Positions 3,830 to 52,045 of a stretch of 64,000 nt of DNA are shown in pieces. Location: positions 12,400,001-12,464,000 of the forward strand of contig NC_047070.1 in assembly GCF_902459465.1 (NCBI RefSeq), read 5' to 3'. The stretch's first letter is position 1; each line of letters opens with the position of its first letter. The position numbers and the translations under genes are program-made. This DNA is from Asterias rubens (lineage: Eukaryota). The notes under the pieces were generated by a model. The model made no database searches, was not told the origin of the DNA, and saw nothing but the letters and a program-made list of their open reading frames with translations.

Positions 3830-5290
3830 GGTTAATTTTCTCAGTAGCCTTAAGCCGCTTGGCCTCCGCCTGCATTAGCTCCTCAAATTTCCCTGCAAAC
3901 AAATCTCCGCCCCCCAAAGGAAGGGCCTAAAACCTCTTGCGAGCGCCCGGAGACGAGAGAAAAAAGGGCATCGAGTGCGTTGCACCGATGAGCACGCGTC
4001 GCCAATGTCGTCACTCGTGCGAACTGGTCTAGCGCTGTTCTCAGCCCATGGTCAAGGCAGTGAAAGGCCGCGCGCAACATGTTCGCGGGAACATCACTGT
4101 CCTCTTCGCACTCCATGGCCAAGTATTCGGTCAAGAGCAGCAAAAATGATGTTGACCGCATACCAAATCTACAAGTGACATCGACTTTCTCAAGGTTCCC
4201 TCTAACTTATCTCGTACCCTTTGAATGCTGTGGCCCCGGCATCGGCGACTAATTTATCTTTCACCGAGTCATGTAGCACTGGTTAAAGAACTCCTCGAAG
4301 TCCGCCTGAGGAAACTGGTAGTATTCACTCTCACGAGATGAATACGGACGCCATTTGGAATTGGCCCTGATTACCTGCATCCGATCAACACACACTTGAT
4401 CCAGCGCATTGGGGAAAAACTTTATCCCTTCCTGCCGCCGGACCCGTTCGGCGTTTGAAAGACTACTTAGTCAGTAACAGCGACTCGCCAACAGTGGGGA
4501 GATCTAGTACCATATCCCGCTGTACCAAGCGCAACTCTGTCTCCGTTATAGATAACCGTTACAGCTGTGCCACCTCGTCCTCCCCAGCCAAATCCCCAGA
4601 GCGAGACGCGTGGGCCGACAGCGGGGATCGGGAGCCGTGTGAACTTGTTGGAGCGGCGTTCCGGCCCTGCACATGAGGCCCCCCCAGGTCGAAAAAGCCG
4701 ACGATGGGTGGATGCTCAACGCCGGCTGGGAGACCGGAGCACGGCTAACCGTGTGCGGTACCGCCCCAAACCAACCATGGCCAATGACCGATGGTTGGGG
4801 GGGTTGAGTAATCTCATTCGGCTGCCCAAACCCGACTGGCATCTGCCGGGGGCAGGGAGGCCAGTCAGGGATGCCGTAAAGGACTGAAATGCTTGGAAAA
4901 GACCAGCCCTTGTCATCAAGTCTTCCCCCTTCAGCGTTTGCCGTGGGTAGACTGATCCGAACTCGAGCTACTCGAGGAAGAGCGGTGCGCACACTGCGAC
5001 TTCTTATTATTTCCACCCCTGTGTGACGTATTGTCTTGAGAAACCAAAGACACGTCAGATGGCCGAGGAACGGGCACCCCCGAACACCGGAAACCCGATG
5101 CCGTGGAGCGCCCGTCAGAGCGTGACCCGCTATGGGGCAACAGTCCGTCTAGCCCTCCCCCGGCCCGCGGCGCCCCAACACCCATCGGGTTGGCGGGCGC
5201 TGCGCGGTCCGGGAACCCGGTTAACAACTCGCCCCGGTCACCCGTGCTGTATTGCACTGTGCCAGGGGGTCCGAGAGGCCAGAACCCATT
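3830..5290 (-). pseudogene. DIRS ORF1 (gag-like), fragmented
   Basis: GC-rich coding-like stretch upstream of RT. ORF 3883-4161 (AHRCNALDAL...EVLGPSFGG) resembles the DIRS ORF1 C-terminus. Confidence 0.6.
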
Positions 5291-28180: not shown

Positions 28181-29097
28181 TCTATGAGGAGACCATCCCT
28201 ACCACCACTTAACCCGGGGCTATCCCACAGACTGCACTGAGTTGGGACAGTCAACCCATTGGACAGTTTGGGACGGCAGTCAATTCTGTGTGGCTGATGC
28301 AGAGAAATAACCGCAGTCTCAGACTTGAAATCAAGTCAACACAGTCTGGTCCCGACAGTACAGTAATCCATGCACGGTACTGTTGAGCTCTACGTGAAAT
28401 CCCAACTACAGTTGGGACGCCCCAACTTTACCACTCAAGTTGGGACCAGTACCAACTATAGTTGGGACGATTATCAAGAAATCCTGCAATGGTGCTGGGA
28501 CGGAACAGTGCTACCTTACCTACCTAGCAAGATTTGTCCATGAAGGAACCTCACTGTTCTGTCCTCTGGCTGGTCTACTTCTGAAACTTAACTATAGTTT
28601 CTAGAAGCACCTCTGCTCTGGTCCTATATCCTTAAAATAACTAAAGTTACAGATACAGGCTTGAATTTGAAGACATCGGGACCCTTTTTTACTTTAGTGT
28701 TAGTATATCGTAGGAGGTCCTGTTTTCGAGGTGTCCCTAAAAACATGGCAAATCTTTTACCTCTCTGTGCGCGATGTAAACAGTCCCTAGATAAAAATTG
28801 TGTGGCTTTATTTGCCAAGCAAAGAGTCTCCTCTCCCTTGACCAAAACTTAGAAACACGTAAGGCTCCACTGGATATTTGCACTTGTAAATGCAAAAAGT
28901 TTGGTATTTTAGGCATTTCTACAAGGTACAAAAATATGTCATAATGTTGAGGCCATATAAAAATATTTGCCCACCGAAAAAGTTTCATCAAACACCATTT
29001 CAATTCACAAATCATGATGATCAAACCATGTGACTGAATATTTTGCTGAGCATTCTGGAAAAAAAATACAGAGGCTTAAAGAAGCCATGTGCCTTAT

Positions 29098-32000
29098 CAG
29101 GCCTTCATTTTGATAAATACGAGGAGAGCTGCAAATCGCTCTCCTTAAATCTCCAAAGTGAATTAAGGAGAGTGATTTGCTCTCATTAACAAAAATCAAG
29201 TTTGAGCTGCAAGGAAAACGATTTACTTTTCGCTAACAAAACCCAAGTTTAATAAACACATACTCATACAAACCAACCTGCTACAGGTTTTAGATTTGTT
29301 TTCTTTGTAAACAAGTGGCAAAGTAGATAAAAGAATGAGTTTGTTTAAAACTAATTTGTTTTGATATTTGTTGTTGCTTTGACATTGATAAAGGTTTTGC
29401 TGTCTACTTTATTGTGTCTTATTTATGTTTGGAGAAATCAAAAAGATGAGTCATCTGAAGTGTTATCAGGGTTAGAAGTAGTTGCTTCAGCACCATCACT
29501 GGTCTCACGTTCATCTGATTCAGACCCAGATTTGCCATTCACATCTTCATCGTCAGGCTCAGCAGACCCTCCGCTGTCACTATCTGTATCAGAGCTGCTA
29601 CATGAATCGATGTCTGAGATTTGCAGGTTGTCTTCTGAGAGCTTTATCTTCTTTGGACCAACCTCTACACCATCATCAGGAACTAGTTTACGCCTCTTCA
29701 ACATAAATAATTTGAGAGCATCTTCCAGGATGTCGTCACGCTCGTGCTCCTCCCAGACAAGATGATTGGCCTTAATTAGAAGAAGATCCTCCATTGTGTT
29801 GTGGTTGAGGGAGAGCCTTCGATCAGACAGCATTGATGTCAGGATGCTAAAACCACACTCAACAGTGCTGTTGCTCACTCCGATGGCCATGGCTACCTCA
29901 ACAAGTAGGCACATGTTCGGCATGTCATTTCTCCTGTACTTGATAATCTGCCCCCACATATCCTTGGTCTTCGTACCTCTGTAGAATGTCTTGTGCAAAA
30001 CTTTCAACATCTGCCACTCTCGCTTAATCTTATTGGACTGGAAGCCAACAGCAGCCAGTGAAGTTGAGAAGTGAGCAGCAACAGCTTCCATTGCTTCCAC
30101 CTCAGCGGTCACATCATCCTCTCTCCAATTAGCTGGATTCAGCCAAGACATGCTTGTAAACACGCTCTCGTTGTTGAATGAGCTGAATCGGTCATCAAGT
30201 CGCTTCATCAACAAAGGAATGCACTTCTGACAGAGACTTTCGCTGACATCATTTACACCATGGCGAAGATTACGTTGGGCCATTTTCTCCAAAGAGACTG
30301 TTGAGTATTGCCGATTTTCTGCACTTCTTCTCATGTGTCCTTCTTTTGGAAGATCCCGGCTAATTTGACTGCTGTTTGGGTCATAAGTATATCCAGCTTT
30401 CTGGATCAGGGAGGCAGAACTTTCATCTTCAAGTAGGCCCTGCAAGCTGATCTTTGTCACCTCAACTGCAGGGAGAACTTCAAAAGCGTGGATATCCCCT
30501 CTCTCAAACTTCAGGGACAGAGCTGAGATGATGTCGAGAATCTCGAAGAAGAGACAGCTGGTGGCAAGGAAATCAGGTCGTCTCAGCTTCTTCAGAATAC
30601 CTCTTAGTTTGGCATTCAGGTTAGAGTGAGTGCTGTGCATGATGGAGTTCTCAATAGCCAGAGCAAGTGGGATCCAGTTGTTGAGAAGGATGCGCAGACC
30701 ATTTCTCTGGTGGCCCACAAAACGCGTTCCGTGAACCTTTGGAAACTTGTACACTTGACATTCCAGTGCTTTTCCGGTAGCTTCAAAGTGCCTCTTGAAT
30801 TTTCCGGATCTTTTCATCAGGTAGTAGATGGTAACCATCAGCTCTTTCACCTCAACAAGGGCAGCCTCATTCATAAGGGCGTCTTTTACTGCCAGCTCCA
30901 GTCGGTGTGAGATGCAGTGAATCATAACAAGCCAGGGGCGGCCGTCTCTCTGTAGTCTAACCAAAAGACCATTGTAAACTCCGGTATTGACAGATGCTCC
31001 ATCTGCAGTAGCCGACACCAAAGCTTTTGTGTATTTGTCAGCAGGGAGCTTTACCTTCTCTGTCAGTGCATGTTTGATAGATTTGTGAAGATTTCCTGCA
31101 GTCGCATCTCCATAACTGTCTACGTTCTCTAGAGCAGCTACAAAGAATTTCGGATGCCCATCTTTCACGACCCGAACCATCACAAGCTCTTTCTCGTTTC
31201 CAGTTTTTCTAGTCTGAGATCCATCACTCAGCACAGAAAATGCAGGAGCTGAACACAATATGGATGTTAACTTAGATCGGATGACATCTGCGATTACATG
31301 AACAAATTCTTTCGCTCTGTTGCTGCTCTCTGTTCCTTGGATGAGTTTCACTCCATTTGCTTTCTGTACTCTCACCAAGGTCTTAAAAGTGGAAAGTGGT
31401 AATCCATCAACAGCCATGATGTAAGCACTTCTCAGCAACTTTCTATATGCCTCGTCTGATACACTGTGGATGGCCTGGGCTATGTTGGGCTGGGTACGTT
31501 TGATTGGGCCAGGCGTAGCAACGACACCTGAGGATGATGCCTCTCCTTCTTCACCAAGAAGTCTCTGATATTCCAGACCAATGGAATGCGCCTAAGGAGG
31601 AAGAACAAAATAAAATTTAACAAATGTTATTGCTCAAATGTCACTGTTTAATTGAAGGTAAAGTATGCATTCAATAAAAAGAAATGCATCATTCAAGATG
31701 AAAACAATACATTTTGTTTGCTGGTTTCAAAAAACAAGGGATGGTTTCAAAATTCAACCATGAATGATATGTCCAGATAAATCTTTTTATTTTACCGATA
31801 ATCTTTAAAACAAAGTCAAATTGTGTAAACAAACTCAAAAGTGGATTTCAATTTCTCATTTTGAATTAGATTTGTTTTAAAGATTGGAACTAAATTATTA
31901 CTTTGTTTGAGCTGCACGTATAAAAGTTCACTTCATGCTCAGCGACATACAACCAAGAAAGAATAAGATTTTTAAAATCCACAAATGAATTATTTGATAC

Positions 32001-34165
32001 ATTAATGATGCCCCTCACAATAATTTATGCATATCATCCCCACAATTTTGTTTTTAATTGTCTGCTTACTCCGCTGTTAATGCTCCCATACATTGGAAAA
32101 AATAAAAACATGTAAGTGAAAACATGGCAGAGAATACGATTGTCTTAACTGTCACAGTAATTATCTTTTAGAAGATTTTATATTGCTCTGCAAGTTGCAA
32201 TAATTTAATTGAAACCTATGCTAAAATAAGTAGCAGTGGATGATGCCCCTTTCTTTTTAGTTTTGAACAATTATTATTCAAGCCTCCAAACTTAGATATA
32301 TTTTTGTGACACACGTTCCCTATGTGATAATAGTGTGTTTACTTAATTTAATCTTAGCTTCGATATTATTTTTTCAATTCCAGTAAAAGAAGCTATTCAA
32401 TTGATCCCTATTCAAAATCATAGGAAAACGCGTTTAAGATAACAGAAAAACGAAACATTTGTGATCGCAGTCCTCCAGTTATTGTATCGCGTTTCTTTGG
32501 GGTCACGACCGCTACTGACTGCCCTGACCAGGCTCACATACAGCGCCGACCACCTCACATCACTACTGTGGTCCTTTCTCTATGAGCGTAATGACAGCAC
32601 GAGCAGCGCAGCGAAGGGCGGCACGGTATGTACATGTACATGTGTACATGTACGAACATGCACAGTGCAAACATTATCCATATGCATGAGCTACAATACA
32701 ATGTGCGGTTGTGATTGGTCTGGAATTGTTTCCTAAATATTTGCATACAAAGGCCATCCAGCGAGCTACACCATTCTGCACGTGGGAAAATACTACACGG
32801 GGTATCAACCATATGCATCATTACACGATATATGGCTTGTGATGGACCCCTCCCATAAAATATGTTAATCACACTCACGCATGCGTACAGACCCTGTTGG
32901 TTGGCAAACGCCATCACGCACCCATTAGCCGTGTACAAAACAGCGCGATGTTCCCTTATTTTGCCAACCAAAACGTTACATGTAGTGCGCACGCGCTATG
33001 TGCAATTTACATATTTCATGGGAAAGGTCTATTGGTCTGGCGTAGTTGAGCGACAGTGGGCGCCAAGAGTGAAGGACGCTGGCAGCAGTTCAGAACATTT
33101 TCGAGGGCGGGACTTGAATTCGAGCCAAAAGTGTTGTAATTTTGGGACGCACGTGTGTTTTAAGTCTACGGCAAATGTTTCTGTTTACCCTTCTTTCCTC
33201 CATGATGTATCTAAACGTTACCCAGTTTCTTTGCTCTATGGTTTACCATGTAGTTTAGTGGCGAGTCGAAACATGGGCAAATTGAATTTGGCACTTCTTA
33301 ACAATTATTTAAAGAAAATAATAATTTGTCATATTATACTTGATCAAAATTATTTAATTATAAAACAATACTTCTAGGTCTATCCAAAACTCACCTTTGA
33401 TGACAGATGTCGTGTGGCGGTGTACTTGGTGACAAATGCAGACCCGATTACGTACGCCTCGATGTCTTTTTGGGCTTGCCCCCGAATTCTTGTATCCTCC
33501 TTGATTTTATTGATGAAGGTCCGACAAACCTTACACCAAATTTTGGTGACCATGATGCGGTCATTTATTGGTTTCGTCTCGTAACCATAGCTATTTAAAT
33601 TCCACCTCAAAAACGTTGATAGCTGAACACTTGACATTTTAATGGCATTTATAATCTAGCAAAACAAAACGTGCATGCTCTACACTACCAATAATTAGAA
33701 CAAGCAGCCCGGCCGCGAGCTATGAACTTACTTACAAAATTCCTAACCAATCACAGGCGTGTATTTGTGGTGCCCGTGAATATTTATTACCAATCGTCCA
33801 CCAGCTAGAATACTATAGGCCCCGCCCAGATACGTTTGTGTGCAACCAGCTGGCCGGCCGGGGACCGGCATCATCAAACACGCCGCATGAACGCACAACT
33901 CACACACTTTGATACAAAACGTTTGCCTCTGCCAAGTTCAACAATCGCGGGTTTAAAACACAAAACAAAAAACTTCCGCTCATTAAATTTTGCCATTGCC
34001 AACTCTGAAGCGGCTTGTTTCGATCACCAGTTTCAGGTTTTGGGTTTTGATTAAAAAATGCTCTTGTTAAATTTGTAAGGAGCGCTTTTTTTTGCTCTCC
34101 TTGGAAAACATTAAGGAGCGCGGAGGAGCGCGAGTGCGATCGCGCTCCTTAAAAATTAAGGTCTG
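29098..34165 (-). mobile_element. Full-length hAT-superfamily DNA transposon (5068 bp)
   Basis: TIR CAGGCCTTCATTTT / CAGACCTTAATTTT, flanking CCTTAT duplication, AGGAG(C/A)G subterminal motifs. An empty-site paralog has a single ATAAGG at 42833-42838. Confidence 0.9.
29438..33637 (-). CDS. Spliced hAT transposase (ZNF862-like type), ~798 aa; exons 33637-33395 and 31591-29438
   Basis: Donor AAG|gtgagt, acceptor ccttag|GCG, phase 0, no stops. Zn-finger-like WCKVC...RHLSSK|AH spans the intron. Catalytic-type motifs VLSDGS, TADGASVN, HCISHRLEL and TVECGFS. Confidence 0.88.
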
Positions 34166-34815
34166 CCTTATATCATTTTCTAATATTTTTTGAGATTTTT
34201 TTTTTAACCCTCCGATCAATATTATTATTAATATTAAAATTTAAAACGATCAGCTTGTTGATTCAATATCACTGTTTATTTATACACTTTATTCTAAATT
34301 TTAAGAGAAAAAAAAGGGGGAAAAAATAAATAAAAATCAGATTTGAAAGCCAATTATTATTCACACTTTTTTTTTAATTATTTATTTTTGTTATTTTTTG
34401 CAAATTACCATGGTAATTTTAAAATTTCATTAAAAAATATTTTGAACAAAACGAAGACAACTGCTGGCTATAGAGTAATATACACAGTCTCAAAGAACAC
34501 TTGTAGTCACTGTAGATGTTTCTTCCATGTATGGCTTCACCGGGAAACTATGCTTTCTTGTTTGCCGTGAAAACAGGAAAAACTCAAAACAAATGGGGCC
34601 AGTTGAAGTCATCGAAGATCGGTGTGTAGTGTGAACATTTCAATGTCCATCAAGTTTTAACAATATGTTTGCATACTTCATATTAACAAAAGAAGGTAAT
34701 TAGGGCATCGGTTGATATAAGGCATCATTATTTTTTTCCCAATTCTAAGAAAAAGGCATATTACTTTTATTAGCGTGAAAACTGGTAAGGGGAGGATATA
34801 ATTAATTCTGCTTAC

Positions 34816-37287: not shown

Positions 37288-40200
37288 ATGGCATATGTAC
37301 GCCATCTTGATGGTTCTACAATGTCTTATTGGACCAAGCGACGTAATGTAGCAAAACAAATTAACCAACACTTGCAAGACATAGTAGATCATGATGAACA
37401 AATTGTAAATGAAACACTTGTTTTGGCAGTTGCGCGTGCAGAAACAATAGATCGAGAACTTATTGAACGCTCAGTAGAAAGTGGGACTCCTGGGAGAAGT
37501 GATGAAGAGCCATGTTCTGAATCTTATCCTGATTTCTTGATTGCAGATGATATTGATAGTGCTGGGTTTAATTATTCTGATAGCGAGTCCGATAGTGATA
37601 GTGATGCATCTCGACTTCCCGAATGTGATCCAAACTCGGAACTTCCCAAAGAGCTAAAACATTGGGCCATCAAACACAACATAACTCACCTTGCCCTTGG
37701 GGAACTGTTACCGGTACTGCAGAAATATCACTCCTCATTGCCTAAAGATCCCCGTACTCTGTTGTCAACAGGTAGATTAGACGGTATCAAAAATATAGAT
37801 GGAGGACAGTATTACCATTTTGGGATAAGGGCTGGCATTGTTGCGACTTTCATGTGCAATCATTCAATCTTCCACAGTTCTCAGAAATTCCACCTTCAAG
37901 TGAATATTGATGGTCTACCAATTTTCAAAAGCAGCAACACACAGCTTTGGCCTATCTTAGGCTTATTGGTTAATCTACCTCAGTCACACTTAAAAGCTGA
38001 GCCATTTGTAATAGGCTTGTTTTCAGGAAAGGAAAAGCCTAAAAACCCAGAAGAATTCTTGTGTGATTTTGTAGATGACATGTCAGATATTGAATCTAAT
38101 GGACTAGAGTACCAGGGACAATTACACAAAGTGTTTGTGTCTGCAATAATATGTGATGCGCCAGCTAGAGCCTATGTCAAGCAAGTGAAGTCTCATTCTG
38201 GTTATTATGGTTGTGAGAAGTGTACTTTTCGTGGTGTCTACGCCGGAAAAATGACATTTCCGAAACTTAATGCCCCATTACGCACTGACCTCTCTTTCAC
38301 TAATAGGTTAGACAATAATCATCACATAGGACCCAACCCATTGAGCCGTCTTTCCAATCTAGGGATGGTTTCAAGATTTCCCCTAGATTATATGCATCTG
38401 GTTGCTTGTGTTCTGGATGAAAGGTCCACTGAAATATCGCCTGGGACGACGTATGTATGGTGTTCCATAGAGGACAGCCTCCGTCGGAGTTGTGAGTTGT
38501 CCGTCGGAGTTGTGAGTTGGGGCGTCGGAGTTGTGAGTTGGGGAGTCGGAGTTGTGGGTTGGCCGTCGTAGTTGTGAGTTGCCCGTCGGAGTTGTGAGTT
38601 GGGCCGTCGTAGTTGTGAGTTGTCCGTCGGAGTTGTGAGTTGGCCGTCGTAGTTGTGAGTTGGGCCGTCGGAGTTGTGAGTTGGCCGTCGTAGTTGTGAG
38701 TTGGGCCGTCGGAGTTGTGAGTTGGCCGTCGTAGTTGTGAGTTGGCCGTCGTAGTTGTGAGTTGGCCGTCGTAGTTGTGAGTTGTCCGTCGGAGTTGTGA
38801 GTTGGGGCGTCGGAGTTGTGAGTTGGGGCGTCGGAGTTGTGGGTTGGCCGTCGTAGTTGTGAGTTGTCCGTCGGAGTTGTGAGTTGGGCCGTCGTAGTTG
38901 TGAGTTGTCCGTCGGAGTTGTGAGTTGGCCGTCGTAGTTGTGAGTTGTCCGTCGGAGTTGTGAGTTGGGCCGTCGGAGTTGTGAGTTGGCCGTCGTAGTT
39001 GTGAGTTGGCCGTCGTAGTTGTGAGTTGTCCGTCGGAGTTGTGAGTTGGCCGTCGTAGTTGTGAGTTATTTGACATTCTATCATTTTTTGTTAATAGTGA
39101 AAACGCCCATTCCTATTTTCATTTATTTTATAACATCGTAGAGAAAACGTTTTTTAAAGATACCTTACAGTTTAGGCCGGTTCGCAGGAATTAAAGATGA
39201 TGGTTAGCCCGTATTCCTCAACAAAATGAAAGAACAAAATATTTACATATTTTTAACGCCAGGAACTGTAGGTAGAACGATTTTTATCCAGACCATTTCA
39301 TTCTGATTGGTTGAGCTCCGGTCAATCAGGAGAATGTGCAACTTACTGAATATTCATGACTGTTCGTTTCGCGCACACTGCGAAATTGTCAGCTATAATG
39401 TGTCACTTTGTGTACAGAAGTACATAATATTCAAGCACCAGACTGCTGCCCAATGTAAATTATTGAAATTGACGTCATAATACAGGAAAATGAAAAGGCT
39501 GATCCAGCCATTCACTGTATTTTGTAATCTTTGAAGTATATATAAAGTAAGTGGCAACAACTCTATATCCTGGGATAATTGCAATTTAACATATTTTGGC
39601 TTTCAGATCGTCTAAAAATCTGGCAATGCATCTGTAAATTGCTACTAGTTTCCCGGGGGATCCATAAGAAGTATAGTTTTTGTTTTTGTTTGAACAGCAA
39701 ATAAACCCACCAAGGATACAAGTCAATAAAACAAACTCAAGGCATCGTCAGATTTATGTCTATAATTTGTTATTTGGAAGCACAGCTTGCATACACACAG
39801 GTCACAGCTCGGGTATCAGGAAAATTTGCATAGTTCCGTTGGCTTATGCGTTCATGCGTTCGTATTTCCGTTTACAACAAACAACATATAAATTATTTCA
39901 AGTTAACCAACTAAAACACTATTCATCCATACCTAGTCAATCCAACTTACATAACACTTTCAAATACTAAAGTTTTAGTATGTGTTTGTGTTTGTTTGTT
40001 TGTTTGTTGGGGTGTTTGTTTAACCTGTTCGTTGAGTGAAATTGTTTGTCCTTTTGTCTCTTGGTTGGACTGACACACCTCTTGGTGACAGTGCAGGCAC
40101 TATTGTCAGTCCTGGCAAACCTGTAGTGTTGATGTCTTTCTGTTGTCCTCAGTCGTGTAGTACTTTTTTCTTTCTTTTTTTCTTTTACTGCCTGCCATCC

Positions 40201-41717
40201 TTTTTATATATCTTGATGTATCCCCCTTGTTACTGTTTTCCAATACAGATGTATGTTTTTATATAATTAATGTTTTAAAGAGTTGTTTCCTTTTCGTATA
40301 AATTTTTGTAATTTTTTGTATTTTATGTGAATTGCCAAATAATAATAATAATAATAAATGATAATAAAGGATGATTTGACCATCTTTGGACTAATTTAAT
40401 GATAGGCATACACTTTAAATTTTATTTAATTTTTATTTAATGTTAAATTGCTATCGGGGTGTAAAAACATATAACGCTTTCATGGTGCCTTGAACGAAAA
40501 AGAATTTAGTGAAAGATTAATGCTAGTTCGTTATAAGGCCCGCATCCTACCTGCAGTTATTAAAGAATATGTTACAATTCATAAACAACATTTCGAAGGG
40601 GCGTAGATAAATATAAAATATCAGATCTGCAACTGACAACATAGTGCTGTGCGAACTAAACATAGGCCTAATTTCCCAATAAAAGCATCGAACACATGGG
40701 TCCATCCATTTCCTGTAGGCATAGGCAAGCAAAAGTGACGAATCGATGGATTCAGCAAGGTATAATTCATCACAATCGGAACTCAATCACATGTGTAGAA
40801 GAACCCGGAAGTAGGCATACGCCACCTATTGACCATTGCAGTTTAGTAAACAAAATAAAAAGTCCGACGGCCAACTCACAACTCCGACGGCCCAACTCAC
40901 AACTCCGACGGCTCTACTCACAACTACGACGGACAACCCACAACTCCGACGGACAACTCACAACTACGACGGACAACCCACAACTACGACACACAACTCA
41001 CAACTCCGACGGCCCAACTCACAACTCCGACGGACAGCCCACAACTCCGACGGCCCAACTCACAACTCCGACGGACAGCCCACAACTACGACGCCCAACT
41101 CACAACTCCGACGCCCCAACTCACAACTCCGACGGACCAACTCACAACTACGACGCACAACTCACAACTCCGACGGACAGCCCACAACTACGACGCACAA
41201 CTCACAACTCCGACGGACCAACTCACAACTACGACGCACAACTCACAACTCCGACGGCCCATGGAGGTAGAATTAGAATTCTACCTCCATGGACGGCCCA
41301 ACTCACAACTCCGACGGCCCAACTCACAACTCCGACGCCCCAACTCACAACTCCGACGGACCAACTCACAACTACGACGCACAACTCACAACTCCGACGG
41401 CCCAACTCACAACTCCGACGCCCCAACTCACAACTCCGACGGACAACTCACAACTACGACGGCCAACTCACAACTCCGACGGCCCAACTCACAACTCCGA
41501 CGCCCCAACTCACAACTCCGACGCCCCAACTCACAACTCCGACGGACAACTCACAACTACGACGGAGGCTGTCCTCTATGGAACACCATACGTATGAGAT
41601 TGCAGGTCTCTGAAACGCTTGTATCTCTTCGCTCTAACATTCCTCATGAATTTGCTAGGAAACCACGTTCCCTCACTGAATTGGACCGATGGAAAGCCAC
41701 TGAATTCAGATTGTTTG
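37288..41717 (+). pseudogene. EnSpm/CACTA (CMC)-type transposase, frameshifted, interrupted and truncated
   Basis: VNIDGLP, LWPIL, ICDAPARA, GYYGCEKC, PLDYMHLV. It resumes after 41591 as MRLQVS...IPHEFARKPRSLTELDRWKATEFRLF. Confidence 0.88.
38455..41591. mobile_element. Foldback-type element with ~0.6-0.7-kb inverted arms built of 20-21-bp tandem repeats
   Basis: Perfect 28-bp outer TIR GTATGGTGTTCCATAGAGGACAGCCTCC. Arrays GTCG(G/T)AGTTGTGAGTTG(G/T)(G)CC at 38481-39066 and the reverse complement at 40863-41565. The target duplication reads as GTAT or CGTATG. Confidence 0.92.
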
Positions 41718-42214: not shown

Positions 42215-43210
42215 ATAATATAATATTAATATCCTCCTCTTACCAGTTTTCACGGTATTATGCCTTTTTCTTTGAATTGGGAAACAAATAATGATGCGAT
42301 ATATCAACCGATGCCCTAATTATCTTCATTTGTTTATATTAAGTATGCAAACATAAATTAAAACTTGATGGACATTGAAATGTTCTCACCACACACCGAT
42401 CTCCAATGACTTCAACTGGTCCCATTTGTTTTTCCTGTTTTCACGGCAAACGAGAAAGTATGGTTTCCCGGTGAAGCCATACATGGAAGAAACATCTGCA
42501 GTGACTACAAGTGTTCTTTGAGACTCTCTGTATGACTATATAGCCAGCAGTTGTCTTAATTTTATTCCCAATATTTTTTTATTAAATTTTAAAAATTACC
42601 ATGGTAACTTGCAAAAAAATTAAAACAATAATAAAAAGTGTGAATAATTACTGGCTTTCAAAGCTGATTTATTATTTTTATTATTATTTTTTTATTTCTT
42701 AATATTTATAATAAAGCGTATAAATAAACAGTGATAATTGAATCAACAAGCTGATGTTTAAATGTTAATATTAATAATAATATTGATATGAGGGTTAAAA
42801 AATAAAAATCTCCAAAAATATTAGAAAATGATATAAGGCACATGGCTTCTATAAGCCTCTGTATTTTTTTTCCAGAATGCTCAGCAAAATATTCAGTCAC
42901 ATGGTTTGATCATCATGAATTGTGAATTGAAATAGTGTTTGATGAAACTTTTTCGGTGGGCAAATATTTTTATTATGGCCTCAACATTTTGACATATTTT
43001 TTGTACCTGGTAGAAATGCCTAAAATACCAAACTTTTTGCATTTACAAGTGCAAATAACCAATGGAGCCTTACGTGTTGGTCAAGGGAGAGGAGACTCTT
43101 TGCTTGGCAAATAAAACCACAACATTTTTATCTAGGGACTGTTTACATCGTGCACAGATTTGCCACGATTTTAATTTAGGGACACCTCGAAAACAGGACC
43201 TCCTACGATA
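42215..43210 (+). repeat. Inverted ~1-kb paralog of 34800-34166 joined to 29097-28705 (empty site of the hAT)
   Basis: Colinear reverse-complement alignment, e.g. shared VKGEETLCLANK pseudo-ORFs and CATGGTTTGATCATCATGA. Confidence 0.9.
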
Positions 43211-44304
43211 TCATAAAAGACATGATCATGCCCTGCAAAGTATCCTGGTGTCATGTGTTTTCAGTAGGATAACAGGAAAATTGTTCACAATCAAAAACTG
43301 AATGTTTTTTATTTTAAATCATCTATCCAATTTTTTAACAATAACACTTACACTTCATGGTGTGTTGAAATTTTTAAAGTTTTGGTTTTACGTTGCGAGA
43401 GACAGTCCGCCATTAACAGTGCTTATGCATGCACGACATTGGAGTAACGTCATATTTTTCACACCTTTCATTGGTTGGTATTTTAGTGAATATTCAGAAG
43501 CTAGTATGGCGTGCAAAATAAATCAAAAATATTATTCAATTACTACTTAACAAATTTAATTACATTTTTGTCCTTTCAGGCATTATGGCTACTATATTAG
43601 AATCCAGAGATATCATAAGGCATGAAAGTAAAACACCCCACCCCCCCTTGAAGCACACACACTTCATAACAATCCCTTTTCCCCCATTTCAGACCAGTAA
43701 TGTTTGGTTTCAGGAGATAAGAAACCAATCTATGATATTTTCTCTTTAATATAGACTTAATATATATTACGCTAAATCAGAATTTATTACAGTATGCAGT
43801 TAATCAAAAAAAAAAAAAATCCACATATTTTTCACTTAAATAATTTTAATTTTTTCCCCATATTGGCACACCATAGAATCCCAAAAAGTAACCACCTCAC
43901 GTGATCCATCTACTGACTAAAGCAGAATGAAACTCAATCTTGCAGATAGTAATTTTCGTTTGAACTTTCGATGTTTCTTTGACTCATTTGAATGTTGGCA
44001 TAATAATGCACTAGTGATTTGTACAAAAAATCAATCATGTTATAAATGTTTGAGCATAACCAACAACAGGAAACTTTATTCTCAGCATGATTAAGCCTGA
44101 TGAAAATACAAACCGTGAGTAAACTGCATAGCTTCTGTCACCAGTGCAGCTTGCTCAATCTCGCGGTAAACAAGAATCAAAGTTGGGGTTCGAAAACATA
44201 TGAGGGTCGAAAACATATGACGCTACGATACAACAATGCATACTCTCTCTCAGGTATTTAATTGATTGATGGTCTACCATGACTGTCTTGGTCTAGGACT
44301 CTCT

Positions 44305-48390: not shown

Positions 48391-49613
48391 GCCACAGCAG
48401 CCTGGGCCAAACATAGTTAAAAGAACTGTCAAGCCACATCAGTCTTAGACCAACATAGTCAAAAGAACTGTCAAGCCACAGCAGTCTTAGACCAACATAG
48501 TCAAAAGAACTGTCAAGCCACAGCAGTCTTAGACCAACATAGTCAAAAGAACTGTCAAGCCACAGCGGTCTTAGACCAACATAGTCAAAAGAACTGTCAA
48601 GCCACAGCAGTCTTAGACCAACATAGTCAAAAGAACTGTCCAGCCACATCAGTCTTAGACCAACATACATGTAGTCAAAAGAACTGTCCAGCCACAGCAG
48701 TCTTAGACAACATAGTCAAAAGAACTGTCAAGCCACAGCAGTCTTAGACCAACATAGTCAAAAGAACTGTCAAGCCACAGCAGTCTTAGACCAATATAGT
48801 CTAAAGAACTGTCAAGCCACATCAGCCTTAGACCAACATAGTCAAAAGAACTGTCAAGCCACAGCAGTCTTAGACCAACATAGTCAAAAGAACTGTCAAG
48901 CCACAGCAGTCTTAGACCAACATAGTCAAAAGAACTGTCAAGCCACAGCAGTCTTAGACCAACATAGTCAAAAGAACTGTCCAGCCACATCAGTCTTAGA
49001 CCAACATACATGTAGTCAAAAGAACTGTCAAGCCACAGCAGTCTTAGACCAACATAGTCAAAAGAACTGTCAAGCCACAGCAGTCTTAGACCAATATAGT
49101 CTAAAGAACTGTCAAGCCACATCAGCCTTAGACCAACACAGTCAAAAGAACTGTCAAGCCACAGCAGTCTTAGACCAACACAGTCAAAAGAACTGTCAAG
49201 CCACAGCAGTCTTAGACCAACATAGTCAAAAGAACTGTCAAGCCACATCAGTCTTAGACCAACATAGTCAAAAGAACTGTCAAGCCACATCAGCCTTAGA
49301 CCAACATAGTCAAAACAGCTGTCAAGCGACGGCAGTCTTAGACCAACATAGTCAAACGAACTGTCAAGCCACAGCAGTCTTAGACCAACATAGTCAAAAC
49401 AGCTGTTAAGCCACCGTAGTCTTAGACCAACATAGTCAAACGAACTGTCAAGCCACAGCAGTCTTAGACCAACATAGTCAAAAGAACTGTCAAGCCACAG
49501 CAGCCTTAGACCAACAAAGTCAAAATAACTGTCAAGCCACGGCAGTCTTAGACCAACATAGTCAAACGAACTGTCAAGCCACAGCAGTCTTAGACCAACA
49601 TAGTCAAATGAAC
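48391..49613. repeat. 42-bp minisatellite, ~29 units
   Basis: GCAGTCTTAGACCAACATAGTCAAAAGAACTGTCAAGCCACA repeated. One more unit lies at 57488-57532. Confidence 0.97.
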
Positions 49614-52045
49614 TATTATTATTATTATTATTTATTTGACCTCAACAAATACAAGTACATCAAAAAGCACAGCAAAAGTTAACGAAAAGCAACGAACCAA
49701 TCAAAATAATAACGAATACAATAAATATACAAGCAAAAAGCACACAATAAATATAAAAAATAAAAATAAAAACCCAGAACAGAACATGACAGGAGGGCAA
49801 CTAGATGAGCAAAAAAAAGGAATGAATTTAAGAGGAGCATGCAGGCATGGGGAGTAAATCAACTGAGGGAAACAACTGGACAGACCAACAAGGAACAACT
49901 TATGTGGGTCAGGAACAACAAAAGTAAACTTGATTACTGTTGCTCGGAAGCATGTTGTCCCATGCATAAGTAGCACTAATCCAGAGGATCAAACGAAACA
50001 CAATGGACATAGAACTGACTTTACAACAATAGTGATTAGGTTCACCATGCCTGCAAGCACCAGCAAGTTAAAACTAGTTAAGAGGTGGGGTTTAAACAGA
50101 CATCTCTAAGTTGGCGGAGAAATGTCGGCAGAGGAGAGATTACAGCAGCGTCCCGAATATGTGAGGGGAAAGTATCCCATAACCTTGGAAATCGATGGGA
50201 AGGTGAATTGAACAAAGAATCTGTGCGAGCGGAGAGATGGCAGAATTTAGAGTGTGAGGATGACGTGGATTGATGACGGTATTTTCACTGAGAGATTCGC
50301 AGTATGAAATGCCGTGCAAGACCTTAAAGACAAAGGAGCTCAGTAAATAATTACGCCTGTGTATCAAGGGGTGCCAATGGAGCCGCTGCAATCTGTCTTC
50401 GTACGACATTTCTCCTCGCCTTTGGCCAAGAGCAAGACGGGTGGCTGTTCTTTGAACTCTTTCACGTAAATGTTGTTGAGATGAGGTGTAAGGGTGCAAT
50501 GCTGGTAAACCATACTCTAGGATTGGGACAACTAAAGATCTATACAAAGAAAAAATGGCTTTAGGTGAGGAACCCCTGGCAACTGATCGGATGAAACCTA
50601 AGAGGCGATTTGCTCTAGCTACTATGGATGAGGTGTGTGTTGCCCAGGATAGGTTGGAGTCTATTGTGAGACCCAAGTATTGAAATGATTTGACTGCTTA
50701 AGTGGATTGTTGCCTAATTTGTAGATTGGAGGGTGGATGTGTCTGCTTCTAGTGATATGCAAGACTTTGGTTTTACCAGCATTAAAGTTCATGTCATTGT
50801 TATCACACCAGTTTTTAAGTCTGTCTATGTCGAGTTGAAGTGTTTTCATCATCAGGGTTTTGTATGGAACGGTATAAGAGAACGTCGTCTGCAAACAATA
50901 CACAGTTGGAGGAGATTGAATAAGAAATGTCATTAACAAAAAGATTGAACAATAGCGGTCCGAGTACACTTCCCTGTGGTACGCCAGAAGTAACACCAAC
51001 CCATGGAGAAACCCCGCCCCGGAAGAGGACACGTTGTCTGCGACCAGTCAAAAACGACCTAACCCAATGCCACAACTCACCCCGCACATTAAACGATGTT
51101 GCCAGTTTTTCAAGCAAGGTGTGATGCGGCATCGTATCAAAGGCCTTTGACATGTCTAGGAAAACGGCATCTACTCTTGGGGGGGCGGCGTTTATCCAGG
51201 GTAGATGACCAGGAATGCATGATGTTGACCAGTTGGGTGACACAACTTCTGTGCTTCACAAAGCCATGCTGATTAGAGTTGAGGAGGCCAAATGCGCTCA
51301 ACTGATCATTAATAGCAGCAGATACAATGCGCTCGAGAACTTTACAAAGCACAGAAGTAAGAGCAACCGTTCTATAGTTAGTAACTAATGACTTGTCGCC
51401 CTTCTTGTACACTGGCCTTATGTTAGCGCATCGCCAATCATCAGGTAATTGTCCTGTGCTCAACGATGCACTGAGCAACGAACAAAGAGGGTGGGCTATT
51501 TCTGGAGCAATTTTGTTAAGGATATTTGGCAAAATACCATCAGGTCCAGGAGATTTATTCGAAGGGAGCTTTTTGAGTGTAGCGGCAATTTGGCTAGCAG
51601 AAACGGAAATATGAGATAACTCAGGAATGTGAAGTGAACATCGCGGGGGATTGTGGGGTACAGGACCTGATGGTTTACAAACAGAAGCAAAATAATCACT
51701 GAAAGCAGAGGAGATTTTGTCAGGGCAAGTCAGCTTACGATTGTTGTGATTAAAGGATGGAGGGGGAGGAGATTGTTTACGGCTTCTAACAAAGGACCAA
51801 AACTGACCCCTGTTATCGTCACCTTCGAACAATCTATTTACATATTGCCAGTAAGCCTTACAGGTGGATTTCTGAACATTGTTACGAACAGATTTGTACA
51901 AGTTCCAATCAAGGGAACGACCAAATTTGCGAGCTAAATTGAAAAGTTTATGTTTTTTGTTGATCAAGTTCTTAAGTTCACGAGTGATCCAGGGCGTGTG
52001 ACGGGACTTGCGTTTGGTAACCTGTGGAATAGAGTCTCTGATAGC

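What the first reader, a model, noticed from the sequence alone, without database searches (positions are those of the whole stretch)
29098..34165. Apparently intact, spliced hAT transposon with a 6-bp target duplication, confirmed by an in-window empty site
Seen: joining 33637-33395 to 31591-29438 gives an open 798-codon transposase, with the Zn-finger-like motif completed only after splicing. The paralog at 42833 shows a single copy of the target. With symmetric CAG...CTG termini the TSD is CCTTAT (6 bp); the alternative reading is 8-bp TGCCTTAT with 2 nt missing from the right end. Known: canonical hATs make 8-bp TSDs, and minor groups with shorter TSDs are described, as recalled. The usual ERxFS motif reads ECGFS here. 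Inference: a candidate active or recently active element from an atypical hAT lineage.
Basis: partly seen in the sequence, partly recalled or inferred. Interest (0 to 1): 0.7.

Follow-up and report, generated by a model that had tools for sequence, protein, structure and literature searches.

The report
Intact 6-bp-duplicating hAT transposon in starfish
This is a complete, apparently undamaged cut-and-paste jumping gene of the hAT6 kind in the common starfish. It is annotated in public databases as an ordinary host gene, and short derivatives of its family have spread through the genome very recently.

Summary
Window 29098-34165 (Asterias rubens, chromosome-scale contig C10) is a 5,068-bp element. 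It has CAG...CTG ends, subterminal AGGAG(A/C)GC motifs and a minus-strand gene of two exons. The GT..AG intron (33394-31592) sits inside a conserved C2H2 zinc finger.

**Target duplication.** It is 6 bp, not 8. Of 30 copies with both ends in this genome, 24 have perfect 6-bp duplications, 4 are near-perfect, 2 have 5 bp and none has 8. Relatives in Patiria, Glandiceps and Patella also make 6 bp. A sister clade in Hydra makes 8 bp.

**Protein.** It is a hAT transposase: the AlphaFold model's top 11 hits are Hermes, and the D, D, E and CxxH positions are invariant. It is the only open copy of its family in the assembly.

**Splicing.** Three things support it: an identical junction in NCBI's model XP_033632523.1, the same intron position in two other species, and an intronless mollusc relative.

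**Recent activity.** A 2.3-kb non-autonomous derivative has at least 25 copies, 17 of them only 0.3% apart.

**Novelty.** hAT elements with 6-bp duplications are already described as hAT6 (Kapitonov and Jurka 2007). This is a new member of a known kind. Present-day activity is inferred, not shown.

The parts
29092..29097 (.). left copy of the 6-bp target-site duplication (CCTTAT)
   Evidence: a single copy in the empty paralogs
29098..34165 (-). complete autonomous hAT6-type transposon, 5,068 bp (the gene reads on the minus strand)
29098..29111 (.). terminal inverted repeat at the gene-3' end (CAGGCCTTCATTTT)
   Evidence: identical first 14 bases in the 27 other full-length or 2.3-kb copies with both ends
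29112..29200 (.). subterminal region with two palindromic AAGGAGAGC-N8-GCTCTCCTT units, taken as putative transposase binding sites
   Evidence: conserved in subfamily B and in Patiria miniata
29408..29413 (-). AATAAA on the minus strand, 25-30 nt after the stop codon; candidate polyadenylation signal
   Evidence: read directly; not tested
29438..31591 (-). exon 2: 717 codons plus a stop. It holds the last His of the zinc finger, the catalytic core (D123, D197, C226-x2-H229, E578 in exon-2 numbering), the helical insertion domain, the hAT C-terminal region and an acidic/Ser-rich tail
31592..33394 (-). intron, 1,803 bp, GTGAGT...TTAG, phase 0
   Evidence: NCBI model P0001 has the same junction. 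Patiria and Glandiceps have the intron at the same position
32842..33035 (.). dispersed repeat of about 200 bp nested in the intron (dozens of genomic copies at 82-89%)
   Evidence: not aligned in subfamily B copies; no Rfam or tRNA match
33395..33637 (-). exon 1: 81 codons from ATG. It holds the conserved N-terminal SVQLSTF..W block and C35-x2-C38...H77 of the zinc finger
33638..34165 (-). upstream region (5' UTR and promoter, inferred). The last 90 bp carry five AGGAG(A/C)GC motifs and the terminal repeat (34152-34165)
34166..34171 (.). right copy of the 6-bp target-site duplication (CCTTAT)
28705..29097 (.). left part of the high-copy host repeat into which the element inserted
   Evidence: 532 first-look candidates; the 39 other full-length matches scored are 96-98% identical
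34172..34362 (.). right part of the same host repeat.
42833..42840 (-). empty target (TGCCTTAT, single copy) in an older inverted paralog of the host repeat (42225-43211; 86-91% identical to the flanks)

Best explanation
Window 29098-34165 is a full-length autonomous DNA transposon of the hAT superfamily in Asterias rubens. It belongs to the lineage that duplicates 6 bp of target, the group Repbase calls hAT6. It inserted into a copy of a high-copy repeat.

Its one gene is transcribed on the minus strand. Removing a 1.8-kb intron that splits an N-terminal C2H2 zinc finger gives a 798-residue transposase.

Inferred mechanism, by homology with Hermes: the zinc-finger region and the rest of the N-terminal part recognise the AAGGAG(A/C)GC motifs packed into the last 50-90 bp of each end. 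The RNase-H-like DDE core, with the CxxH motif, cuts at the CAG/CTG termini. The excised element is then joined to target DNA cut with a 6-nt stagger, which gives the 6-bp duplication. The target shows a weak nTnnAn preference.

Shown here: the anatomy, the 6-bp duplication, the fold, the intactness and the very recent spread of related non-autonomous copies. Inferred: transcription, catalytic competence, and whether this copy supplied the transposase for the recent 2.3-kb burst. I put competence at about 0.4-0.5.
For: **Anatomy and empty site:**

**Duplication length:**
- Of 30 copies with both ends, 24 have a perfect 6-bp duplication, 3 have one mismatch, 1 has two mismatches, 2 have 5 bp, and none has 8 bp.
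- Relatives in Patiria miniata, Glandiceps talaboti and Patella caerulea have 14-15/16 matching CAG termini and perfect 6-bp duplications.
- On the tree these species form one clade (97/95 support). Its sister is a Hydra clade whose one informative copy has a perfect 8-bp duplication.

**hAT identity:**
- AF2 model with mean pLDDT 81. The Foldseek top 11 hits are all Hermes transposase, E 1e-9 to 2e-7, TM 0.54-0.67 on the target.
- The family profile hits the Hermes C-terminal region at E 2.7e-5.
- D123, D197, C226, H229 and E578 are invariant in 20 relatives.
- Many relatives carry PF05699.

**Splice:**
- Canonical GT..AG, phase 0.
- NCBI XP_033632523.1 uses the same junction.
- The intron is at the identical position in Patiria and Glandiceps.
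- The Patella homolog is one uninterrupted ORF that covers both parts.
- The finger residues W-C-K-x-C...R-H...H are invariant across the junction.

**Intactness and youth:**
- It is the only copy with no stop in 717 codons.
- 10 private substitutions in 2,157 sites.
- Its four departures from clade-conserved residues are also seen in other Asterias copies, wherever those cover the position.

**Family activity:** the 2.3-kb derivative has at least 25 copies at different loci with different duplications. Seventeen of them are 0.30% apart on average, and one pair has no substitutions.

**Binding-site motif:** all 7 AGGAGMGC matches in the 64-kb window lie within about 50 bp of the left end or about 90 bp of the right end. 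None of 100 shuffles reached 7. The motifs are conserved in both subfamilies and in Patiria.
Against: - No RNA evidence.
- The recently amplified 2.3-kb family derives from subfamily B. It is 94-99% identical to the broken C7, C32 and C10b copies, but only 74-94% identical to the window copy. Its driver may therefore have been a subfamily-B transposase that is missing from this haploid assembly.
- Subfamily A itself has only two copies, 1.5% apart.
- Pfam's hAT dimerisation model scores just below its cut-off on this protein alone, 19.9 against 21.4 bits.
- No protein-level comparison with Repbase hAT6 references was possible.
Confidence: 0.85

Rival explanations
1. An intact-looking but silent or incompetent relic. 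On this view the copy is fixed in the species, no longer transcribed or catalytically able, and the recent 2.3-kb burst was driven by a different (subfamily B) transposase source not present in this assembly.
For: - The 2.3-kb family is 94-99% identical to subfamily B remnants and only 74-94% identical to the window copy.
- Subfamily A has just two copies, 1.5% apart.
- There are no RNA data.
Against: - The ORF of 798 codons is open, while every other copy carries stops, frameshifts or deletions.
- The window copy has no private loss of conserved residues.
- The terminal 14 bp and the subterminal motifs are shared between the subfamilies, so cross-mobilisation is plausible.
- No intact B copy was found in 418 Mb.
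Confidence: 0.35
2. A host gene, as NCBI annotates it ('zinc finger protein 862-like'): a domesticated hAT transposase serving the starfish rather than a mobile element.
For: - The NCBI name.
- An intact ORF with a conserved intron position across Ambulacraria.
Against: - It has terminal inverted repeats and a target duplication, and it sits inside a repeat whose other copies are uninterrupted.
- The family has many dispersed copies and deletion derivatives, each with its own 6-bp duplication.
- It has no KRAB or DUF4371 domain.
- The homologs in Patiria, Glandiceps and Patella are likewise bounded by inverted repeats and duplications.
Confidence: 0.03
3. A canonical hAT with an 8-bp duplication (TGCCTTAT) whose right end has lost its last two bases.
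For: In the window alone, TGCCTTAT is present on the left, and TG+CCTTAT can be read on the right.
Against: All 29 other paired copies end in GGTCTG and are followed by a duplication of 6 bp (2 of 5 bp). For none of them do 8 bp match.
Confidence: 0.01

Closest known systems
hAT6 group of hAT transposons (Kapitonov and Jurka 2007, Repbase Reports 7:1192-1204, as cited in PMC12730594)
   Same: A hAT-type transposase combined with 6-bp target-site duplications, found in animals. PMC12730594 places hAT5 and hAT6 inside an animal lineage that includes Blackjack.
   Different: No Repbase hAT6 sequence could be compared here, so identity of the protein clade is inferred from the defining trait only. 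This Asterias family, its conserved intron and its 2.3-kb derivative were not found described in the searchable literature.
Hermes transposase (Musca domestica; PDB 2BW3, 4D1Q, 6DWW, 8EDG)
   Same: Same overall fold across about 570-650 aligned columns. The C-terminal region around the catalytic E matches by sequence profile. It is also an element with short CAG-type ends and subterminal binding motifs.
   Different: Only 11-13% sequence identity. Hermes makes 8-bp duplications, so the spacing of the two strand-transfer sites must differ by 2 bp here (inference).
Hydra vulgaris 'ZNF862-like' hAT elements (P0040 cluster)
   Same: Sister clade on the tree, 36% identical, with the same N-terminal finger and CAGG termini.
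   Different: The one informative copy has a perfect 8-bp duplication. The other three sit in (TA)n, which fits 6 or 8 bp but not 7.
Human ZNF862 and ZMYM-type domesticated hAT genes (the source of the database name)
   Same: Distant homology. Proteins carrying DUF4371 plus the hAT C-terminal domain appear at 25-28% identity.
   Different: No KRAB and no DUF4371 hit. The DUF4371 proteins form a separate clade with 100/100 support. The element is mobile, multi-copy and bounded by inverted repeats.
hAT5 group (5-bp duplications)
   Same: Another minor animal hAT group with shortened duplications. Two of the 30 copies here have 5-bp duplications.
   Different: The modal duplication here is 6 bp (24 perfect and 4 near-perfect of 30).

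Membership tests
hAT superfamily | Hermes-like transposase fold: RNase-H-like DDE core interrupted by a large helical insertion domain | tested here: met
   AF2 model with pLDDT 81. The Foldseek top 11 hits are all Hermes, E 1e-9 to 2e-7. D123, D197 and E578 are invariant.
hAT superfamily | C-terminal hAT dimerisation region (PF05699) holding the catalytic E | tested here: met
   On the single protein the score is 19.9 bits, just under the 21.4 cut-off. The family profile hits the Hermes C-terminus at E 2.7e-5, and many relatives carry PF05699.
hAT superfamily | CxxH motif after the second catalytic D | tested here: met
   C226 and H229 are invariant in 20 relatives.
hAT superfamily | Short terminal inverted repeats beginning YAG (from established knowledge of the family) | tested here: met
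   CAGGCC... and CAGACC... ends, 11 of the first 14 bases complementary between the two ends.
hAT superfamily | 8-bp target-site duplication (the usual state) | tested here: not met
   6 bp in 24 perfect and 4 near-perfect of 30 copies, and none with 8 bp. This is the known exception that defines hAT6, so it does not exclude the superfamily.
hAT superfamily | N-terminal BED-type zinc finger (Cx2C...Hx3-5H) | tested here: inconclusive
   C-x2-C-x38-H-x5-H is invariant in 8 relatives, but exon 1 matches no Pfam finger model. The N-terminal domain was not folded.
hAT6 group | hAT transposase together with 6-bp target-site duplications | tested here: met
   The definition is as cited in PMC12730594.
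hAT6 group | Transposase clusters with the Repbase hAT6 reference proteins | not testable with these tools
   No Repbase sequences are on hand. The four members with a known 6-bp duplication do form one clade at 97/95 support.
ZNF862 (host gene) | KRAB domain, TTF-type fingers and DUF4371, as a single-copy host locus without transposon ends | tested here: not met
   No KRAB or DUF4371 hit. The element has inverted repeats, a duplication and many copies.

The most novel reading that the evidence does not exclude
The window copy is the working transposase source of a hAT6 family that is moving in Asterias rubens populations today. On this reading it cross-mobilises the 2.3-kb derivative, whose copies differ less than alleles usually do. 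The 6-bp clade and its 8-bp Hydra sister clade, about 36-42% identical, would then be a natural matched pair for finding what sets the stagger of hAT target cleavage. It would also be a source of a new vertebrate-independent transposon tool for echinoderms.
Probability: 0.3. Interest if true: 0.55.

Novelty: new member of a known kind. Interest (0 to 1): 0.4.

Why it matters
- **Annotation.** It corrects a public record. XP_033632523.1, 'zinc finger protein 862-like', is a transposon gene, and its start lies 28 codons further upstream.
- **A characterised hAT6 family.** It supplies a fully characterised autonomous hAT6 element with its non-autonomous partners. Thirty insertions document the 6-bp duplication.
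- **Very recent activity.** The family has been active very recently in a model echinoderm.
- **Old features.** The intron inside the zinc finger and the end motifs are conserved between two distantly related sea-star genera. The intron is also conserved in a hemichordate.
- **The length change on a tree.** The change from 8 to 6 bp falls between two sister clades. This makes the structural basis of duplication length experimentally approachable.

Tried and rejected
- **Read laying.** No read-level evidence on splicing or on presence/absence could be obtained.
- **Single-sequence PDB search.** It found nothing. The profile and the fold search were needed.
- **Pfam on exon 1.** No finger model matched.
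- **Rfam and tRNA scans of the element and intron.** Nothing found.
- **Brute-force end scan.** It timed out and was replaced by an indexed scan.
- **Liolophura (L073) and the second Hydra locus (L075).** No convincing ends were found, so their duplication length is unknown.
- **8-bp reading of the window's duplication.** Rejected.
- **In-window paralog as an allele or haplotig.** Rejected. It is 86-91% identical and is one of hundreds of copies of a repeat.
- **The joined 798-residue sequence.** The exons were handled by reference, and the junction was examined through NCBI's own model P0001 and through relatives.
- **The large representative-protein search.** Not used, because the word search and the family evidence settled the protein.
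Full report
**Where we are.** The exon-2 protein is 100% identical to NCBI XP_033632523.1, 'zinc finger protein 862-like [Asterias rubens]'. The window is G000:C10:12400001-12464000 of a 418-Mb assembly.

**The observation.** On the minus strand, 33637-33395 translates to 81 codons from ATG, and 31591-29438 to 717 codons plus a stop. The intervening 1,803 bases begin GTGAGT and end TTAG, in phase 0. Without splicing, the first ORF stops four codons into the intron (33380-33637, 85 aa).

The element starts with CAGGCCTTCATTTT at 29098. Its other end, read on the opposite strand, is CAGACCTTAATTTT and ends at 34165. CCTTAT flanks both ends.

The inverted paralog at 42833-42840 has the two flanks joined over a single TGCCTTAT. 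The flanks turn out to be part of a high-copy repeat. There were 532 first-look candidates, and the 39 other full-length matches scored are 96-98% identical. Five of those copies all show the same uninterrupted target. So the insertion is real. It is also younger than a repeat copy that is itself only 2-4% from its relatives.

**6 or 8 bp.** I searched the genome with the whole element and with each end. I then fetched every place that had both ends. Thirty copies have paired ends:

| Type | Copies |
|---|---|
| The window copy | 1 |
| A 4.3-kb deletion derivative on C3 | 1 |
| An 8.7-kb broken copy on C7 | 1 |
| Copies of a 2.3-kb non-autonomous element | 25 |
| Short elements (301 and 1,504 bp) | 2 |

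Their duplications are as follows:

| Duplication | Copies |
|---|---|
| Perfect 6 bp | 24 |
| 6 bp with one mismatch | 3 |
| 6 bp with two mismatches | 1 |
| Perfect 5 bp | 2 |
| 8 bp | 0 |

All copies end in GGTCTG. The 8-bp reading in the window is therefore a coincidence of the target starting with TG.

Among the 24 perfect sites, T is commonest at position 2 (12 of 24) and A at position 5 (14 of 24), against a background of 31% T and 35% A. From my own knowledge, this weak nTnnAn preference mirrors the usual hAT nTnnnnAn with two central bases fewer. With 24 sites it is only suggestive.

**The protein.**
- Pfam alone is weak: the hAT dimerisation model scores 19.9 bits against a cut-off of 21.4.
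- The word search found 59 relatives in echinoderms, hemichordates, molluscs, cnidarians, a priapulid and a pycnogonid, many with PF05699.
- A 20-sequence alignment has invariant D123, D197, C226, H229 and E578 in exon-2 numbering.
- The alignment's profile hits the C-terminal part of Hermes transposase at E 2.7e-5.
- An AlphaFold model of exon 2 has mean pLDDT 81, and only the acidic tail and a linker are disordered. Its 11 best PDB matches are all Hermes, at E 1e-9 to 2e-7.

It is therefore a hAT transposase.

Of 120 columns that are identical in at least 11 of 12 clade members, the window protein departs at four real positions. The same residues are seen in other Asterias copies wherever those cover the position. 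At one of the four, two subfamily-B copies carry a different residue. None of the four is damage private to this copy.

**The splice.** The junction was judged from NCBI's own spliced model P0001 and from relatives.
- P0001 has exactly this junction (...HLSSK|AHSIG...) but starts at Met29 of exon 1.
- Exon 1 aligns to the N-termini of relatives from its second residue onward: 51% to P0012 and 43% to P0013. The conserved SVQLSTF..W block lies upstream of NCBI's start. The 798-residue model is therefore better supported than the 770-residue one.
- W-C-K-x-C, R-H and a final H are invariant in eight relatives from several phyla. That final H is the second residue of exon 2.
- In Patiria miniata and Glandiceps talaboti the homologous gene has a GT..AG intron at exactly the same codon boundary, 1,041 and 866 bp long.
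- In Patella caerulea the homolog is one uninterrupted 792-codon ORF.

This comparative evidence is strong, but it is not expression evidence. I worked beside those places afterwards. Among the runs that hold part of the stretch, only one is on record as RNA.

**Ends and binding motifs.** All seven AGGAG(A/C)GC matches in the 64-kb window lie within about 50 bp of the left end or about 90 bp of the right end. The expectation was 1.6, and none of 100 shuffles reached 7. They are arranged as palindromic pairs. The first roughly 100 bp of each end, including these motifs, are conserved between both Asterias subfamilies and the Patiria element, although the proteins are only 62% identical. This points to constraint on transposase binding sites (inference).

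**Is it young and active?**
- Every other coding copy has stops, frameshifts or deletions. The window copy is the only one open over all 717 exon-2 codons.
- It differs from its sister copy on C3 by 1.5% in substitutions. Polarised with a subfamily-B copy, 10 changes in 2,157 sites are private to the window copy and 20 to C3.
- The 2.3-kb derivative is strikingly young. Its 25 copies average 98.8% pairwise identity. A core of 17 copies average 0.30% substitution divergence, and one pair has no substitutions over 2,310 sites. They lie on many chromosomes, each with its own duplication.
- That derivative descends from subfamily B. It is 94-99% identical to the broken C7, C32 and C10b copies, against 74-94% to the window copy. 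No intact B copy exists in the assembly.

So one of two things is true. Either the window's transposase cross-mobilises the derivative, which is plausible because the termini and motifs are shared. Or the true driver is absent from this haploid assembly. I cannot decide between these.

**Wider lineage.** Bounded elements around the relatives gave the following:

| Species | Termini matching | Duplication |
|---|---|---|
| Patiria miniata | 14/16 (CAGTCCTTCATTT...) | CTGATG, 6 bp |
| Glandiceps talaboti | 15/16 | TACTAT, 6 bp |
| Patella caerulea | 15/16 | GCGTAC, 6 bp |
| Hydra vulgaris (P0040 group, four copies) | 14-16/16 | one perfect 8-bp (CTCCTATG); three in (TA)n, which fits 6 or 8 bp but not 7 |

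On a maximum-likelihood tree, the four proteins whose elements duplicate 6 bp fall in one clade (97/95 support). That clade is sister to the Hydra clade (98/96). Both are separated at 100/100 from DUF4371-bearing ZNF862/ZMYM-like proteins. The tree has long branches at the base and the root is only a midpoint, so I claim no direction of change.

**Comparison with what is known.** hAT families with 5-bp and 6-bp duplications were named hAT5 and hAT6 by Kapitonov and Jurka in 2007. They are placed within an animal lineage that includes Blackjack (PMC12730594; hAT5 also in PMC9004415). The element meets the definition of hAT6. Clustering with the Repbase reference proteins could not be tested.

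It is not a ZNF862 ortholog. It has no KRAB or DUF4371 domain, and it has transposon ends and many copies. I found no paper describing this family in Asterias.

**Verdict.** This is a new, well-preserved member of a known minor hAT group, and its family was active very recently. Interest is moderate. Its value lies in the corrected annotation, in the matched 6-bp and 8-bp sister clades, and in a possibly live element in a model echinoderm.

Noticed in passing
window 28705-29097 and 34166-34362 (older inverted copy at 42225-43211): The transposon sits inside a copy of a very abundant repeat of about 1 kb or more. There were 532 first-look candidates, and the 39 other full-length matches scored are 96-98% identical. 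Its family was not identified.
   Followed up: partly
window 32842-33035: A dispersed repeat of about 200 bp is nested in the transposase intron, with dozens of genomic copies at 82-89%. It has no tRNA or Rfam match. This part of the intron does not align with subfamily B copies.
   Followed up: partly
L039 (G000:C18:10154636-10156949) and L047 (G000:C7:14897302-14899607): Two copies of the 2.3-kb element have perfect 5-bp duplications (AATTG, GCGTG) instead of 6 bp, so the stagger is occasionally one base shorter.
   Followed up: no
G000:C24:55604-56608: A different hAT-like gene, 35% identical over residues 50-383, lies in an open frame of 718 aa with no stops. It may be another intact element of a separate family.
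   Followed up: no
L071, L083, L084 (Hydra vulgaris): Three of four Hydra relatives sit in (TA)n tracts, which suggests a TA-repeat target preference in that sister clade.
   Followed up: no
window 38455-39067 and 40860-41591: Inverted blocks of short tandem repeats (period about 20 bp) face each other. This is the foldback-like structure that another note of this scan (s1-175498) reports.
   Followed up: no
window 48391-49614 and 3-1541: Two tandem arrays show up in the self-comparison, with periods of about 42 bp and about 330 bp.
   Followed up: no
They lie outside the element, in the host repeat, and were not sent to any search tool afterwards.
   Followed up: no
L070 3874-9263 (Patiria miniata): The NCBI model for the Patiria homolog (P0002) starts in mid exon 2. 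An exon-1 equivalent (4549-4785) and the conserved intron lie upstream, so that model is truncated as well.
   Followed up: partly
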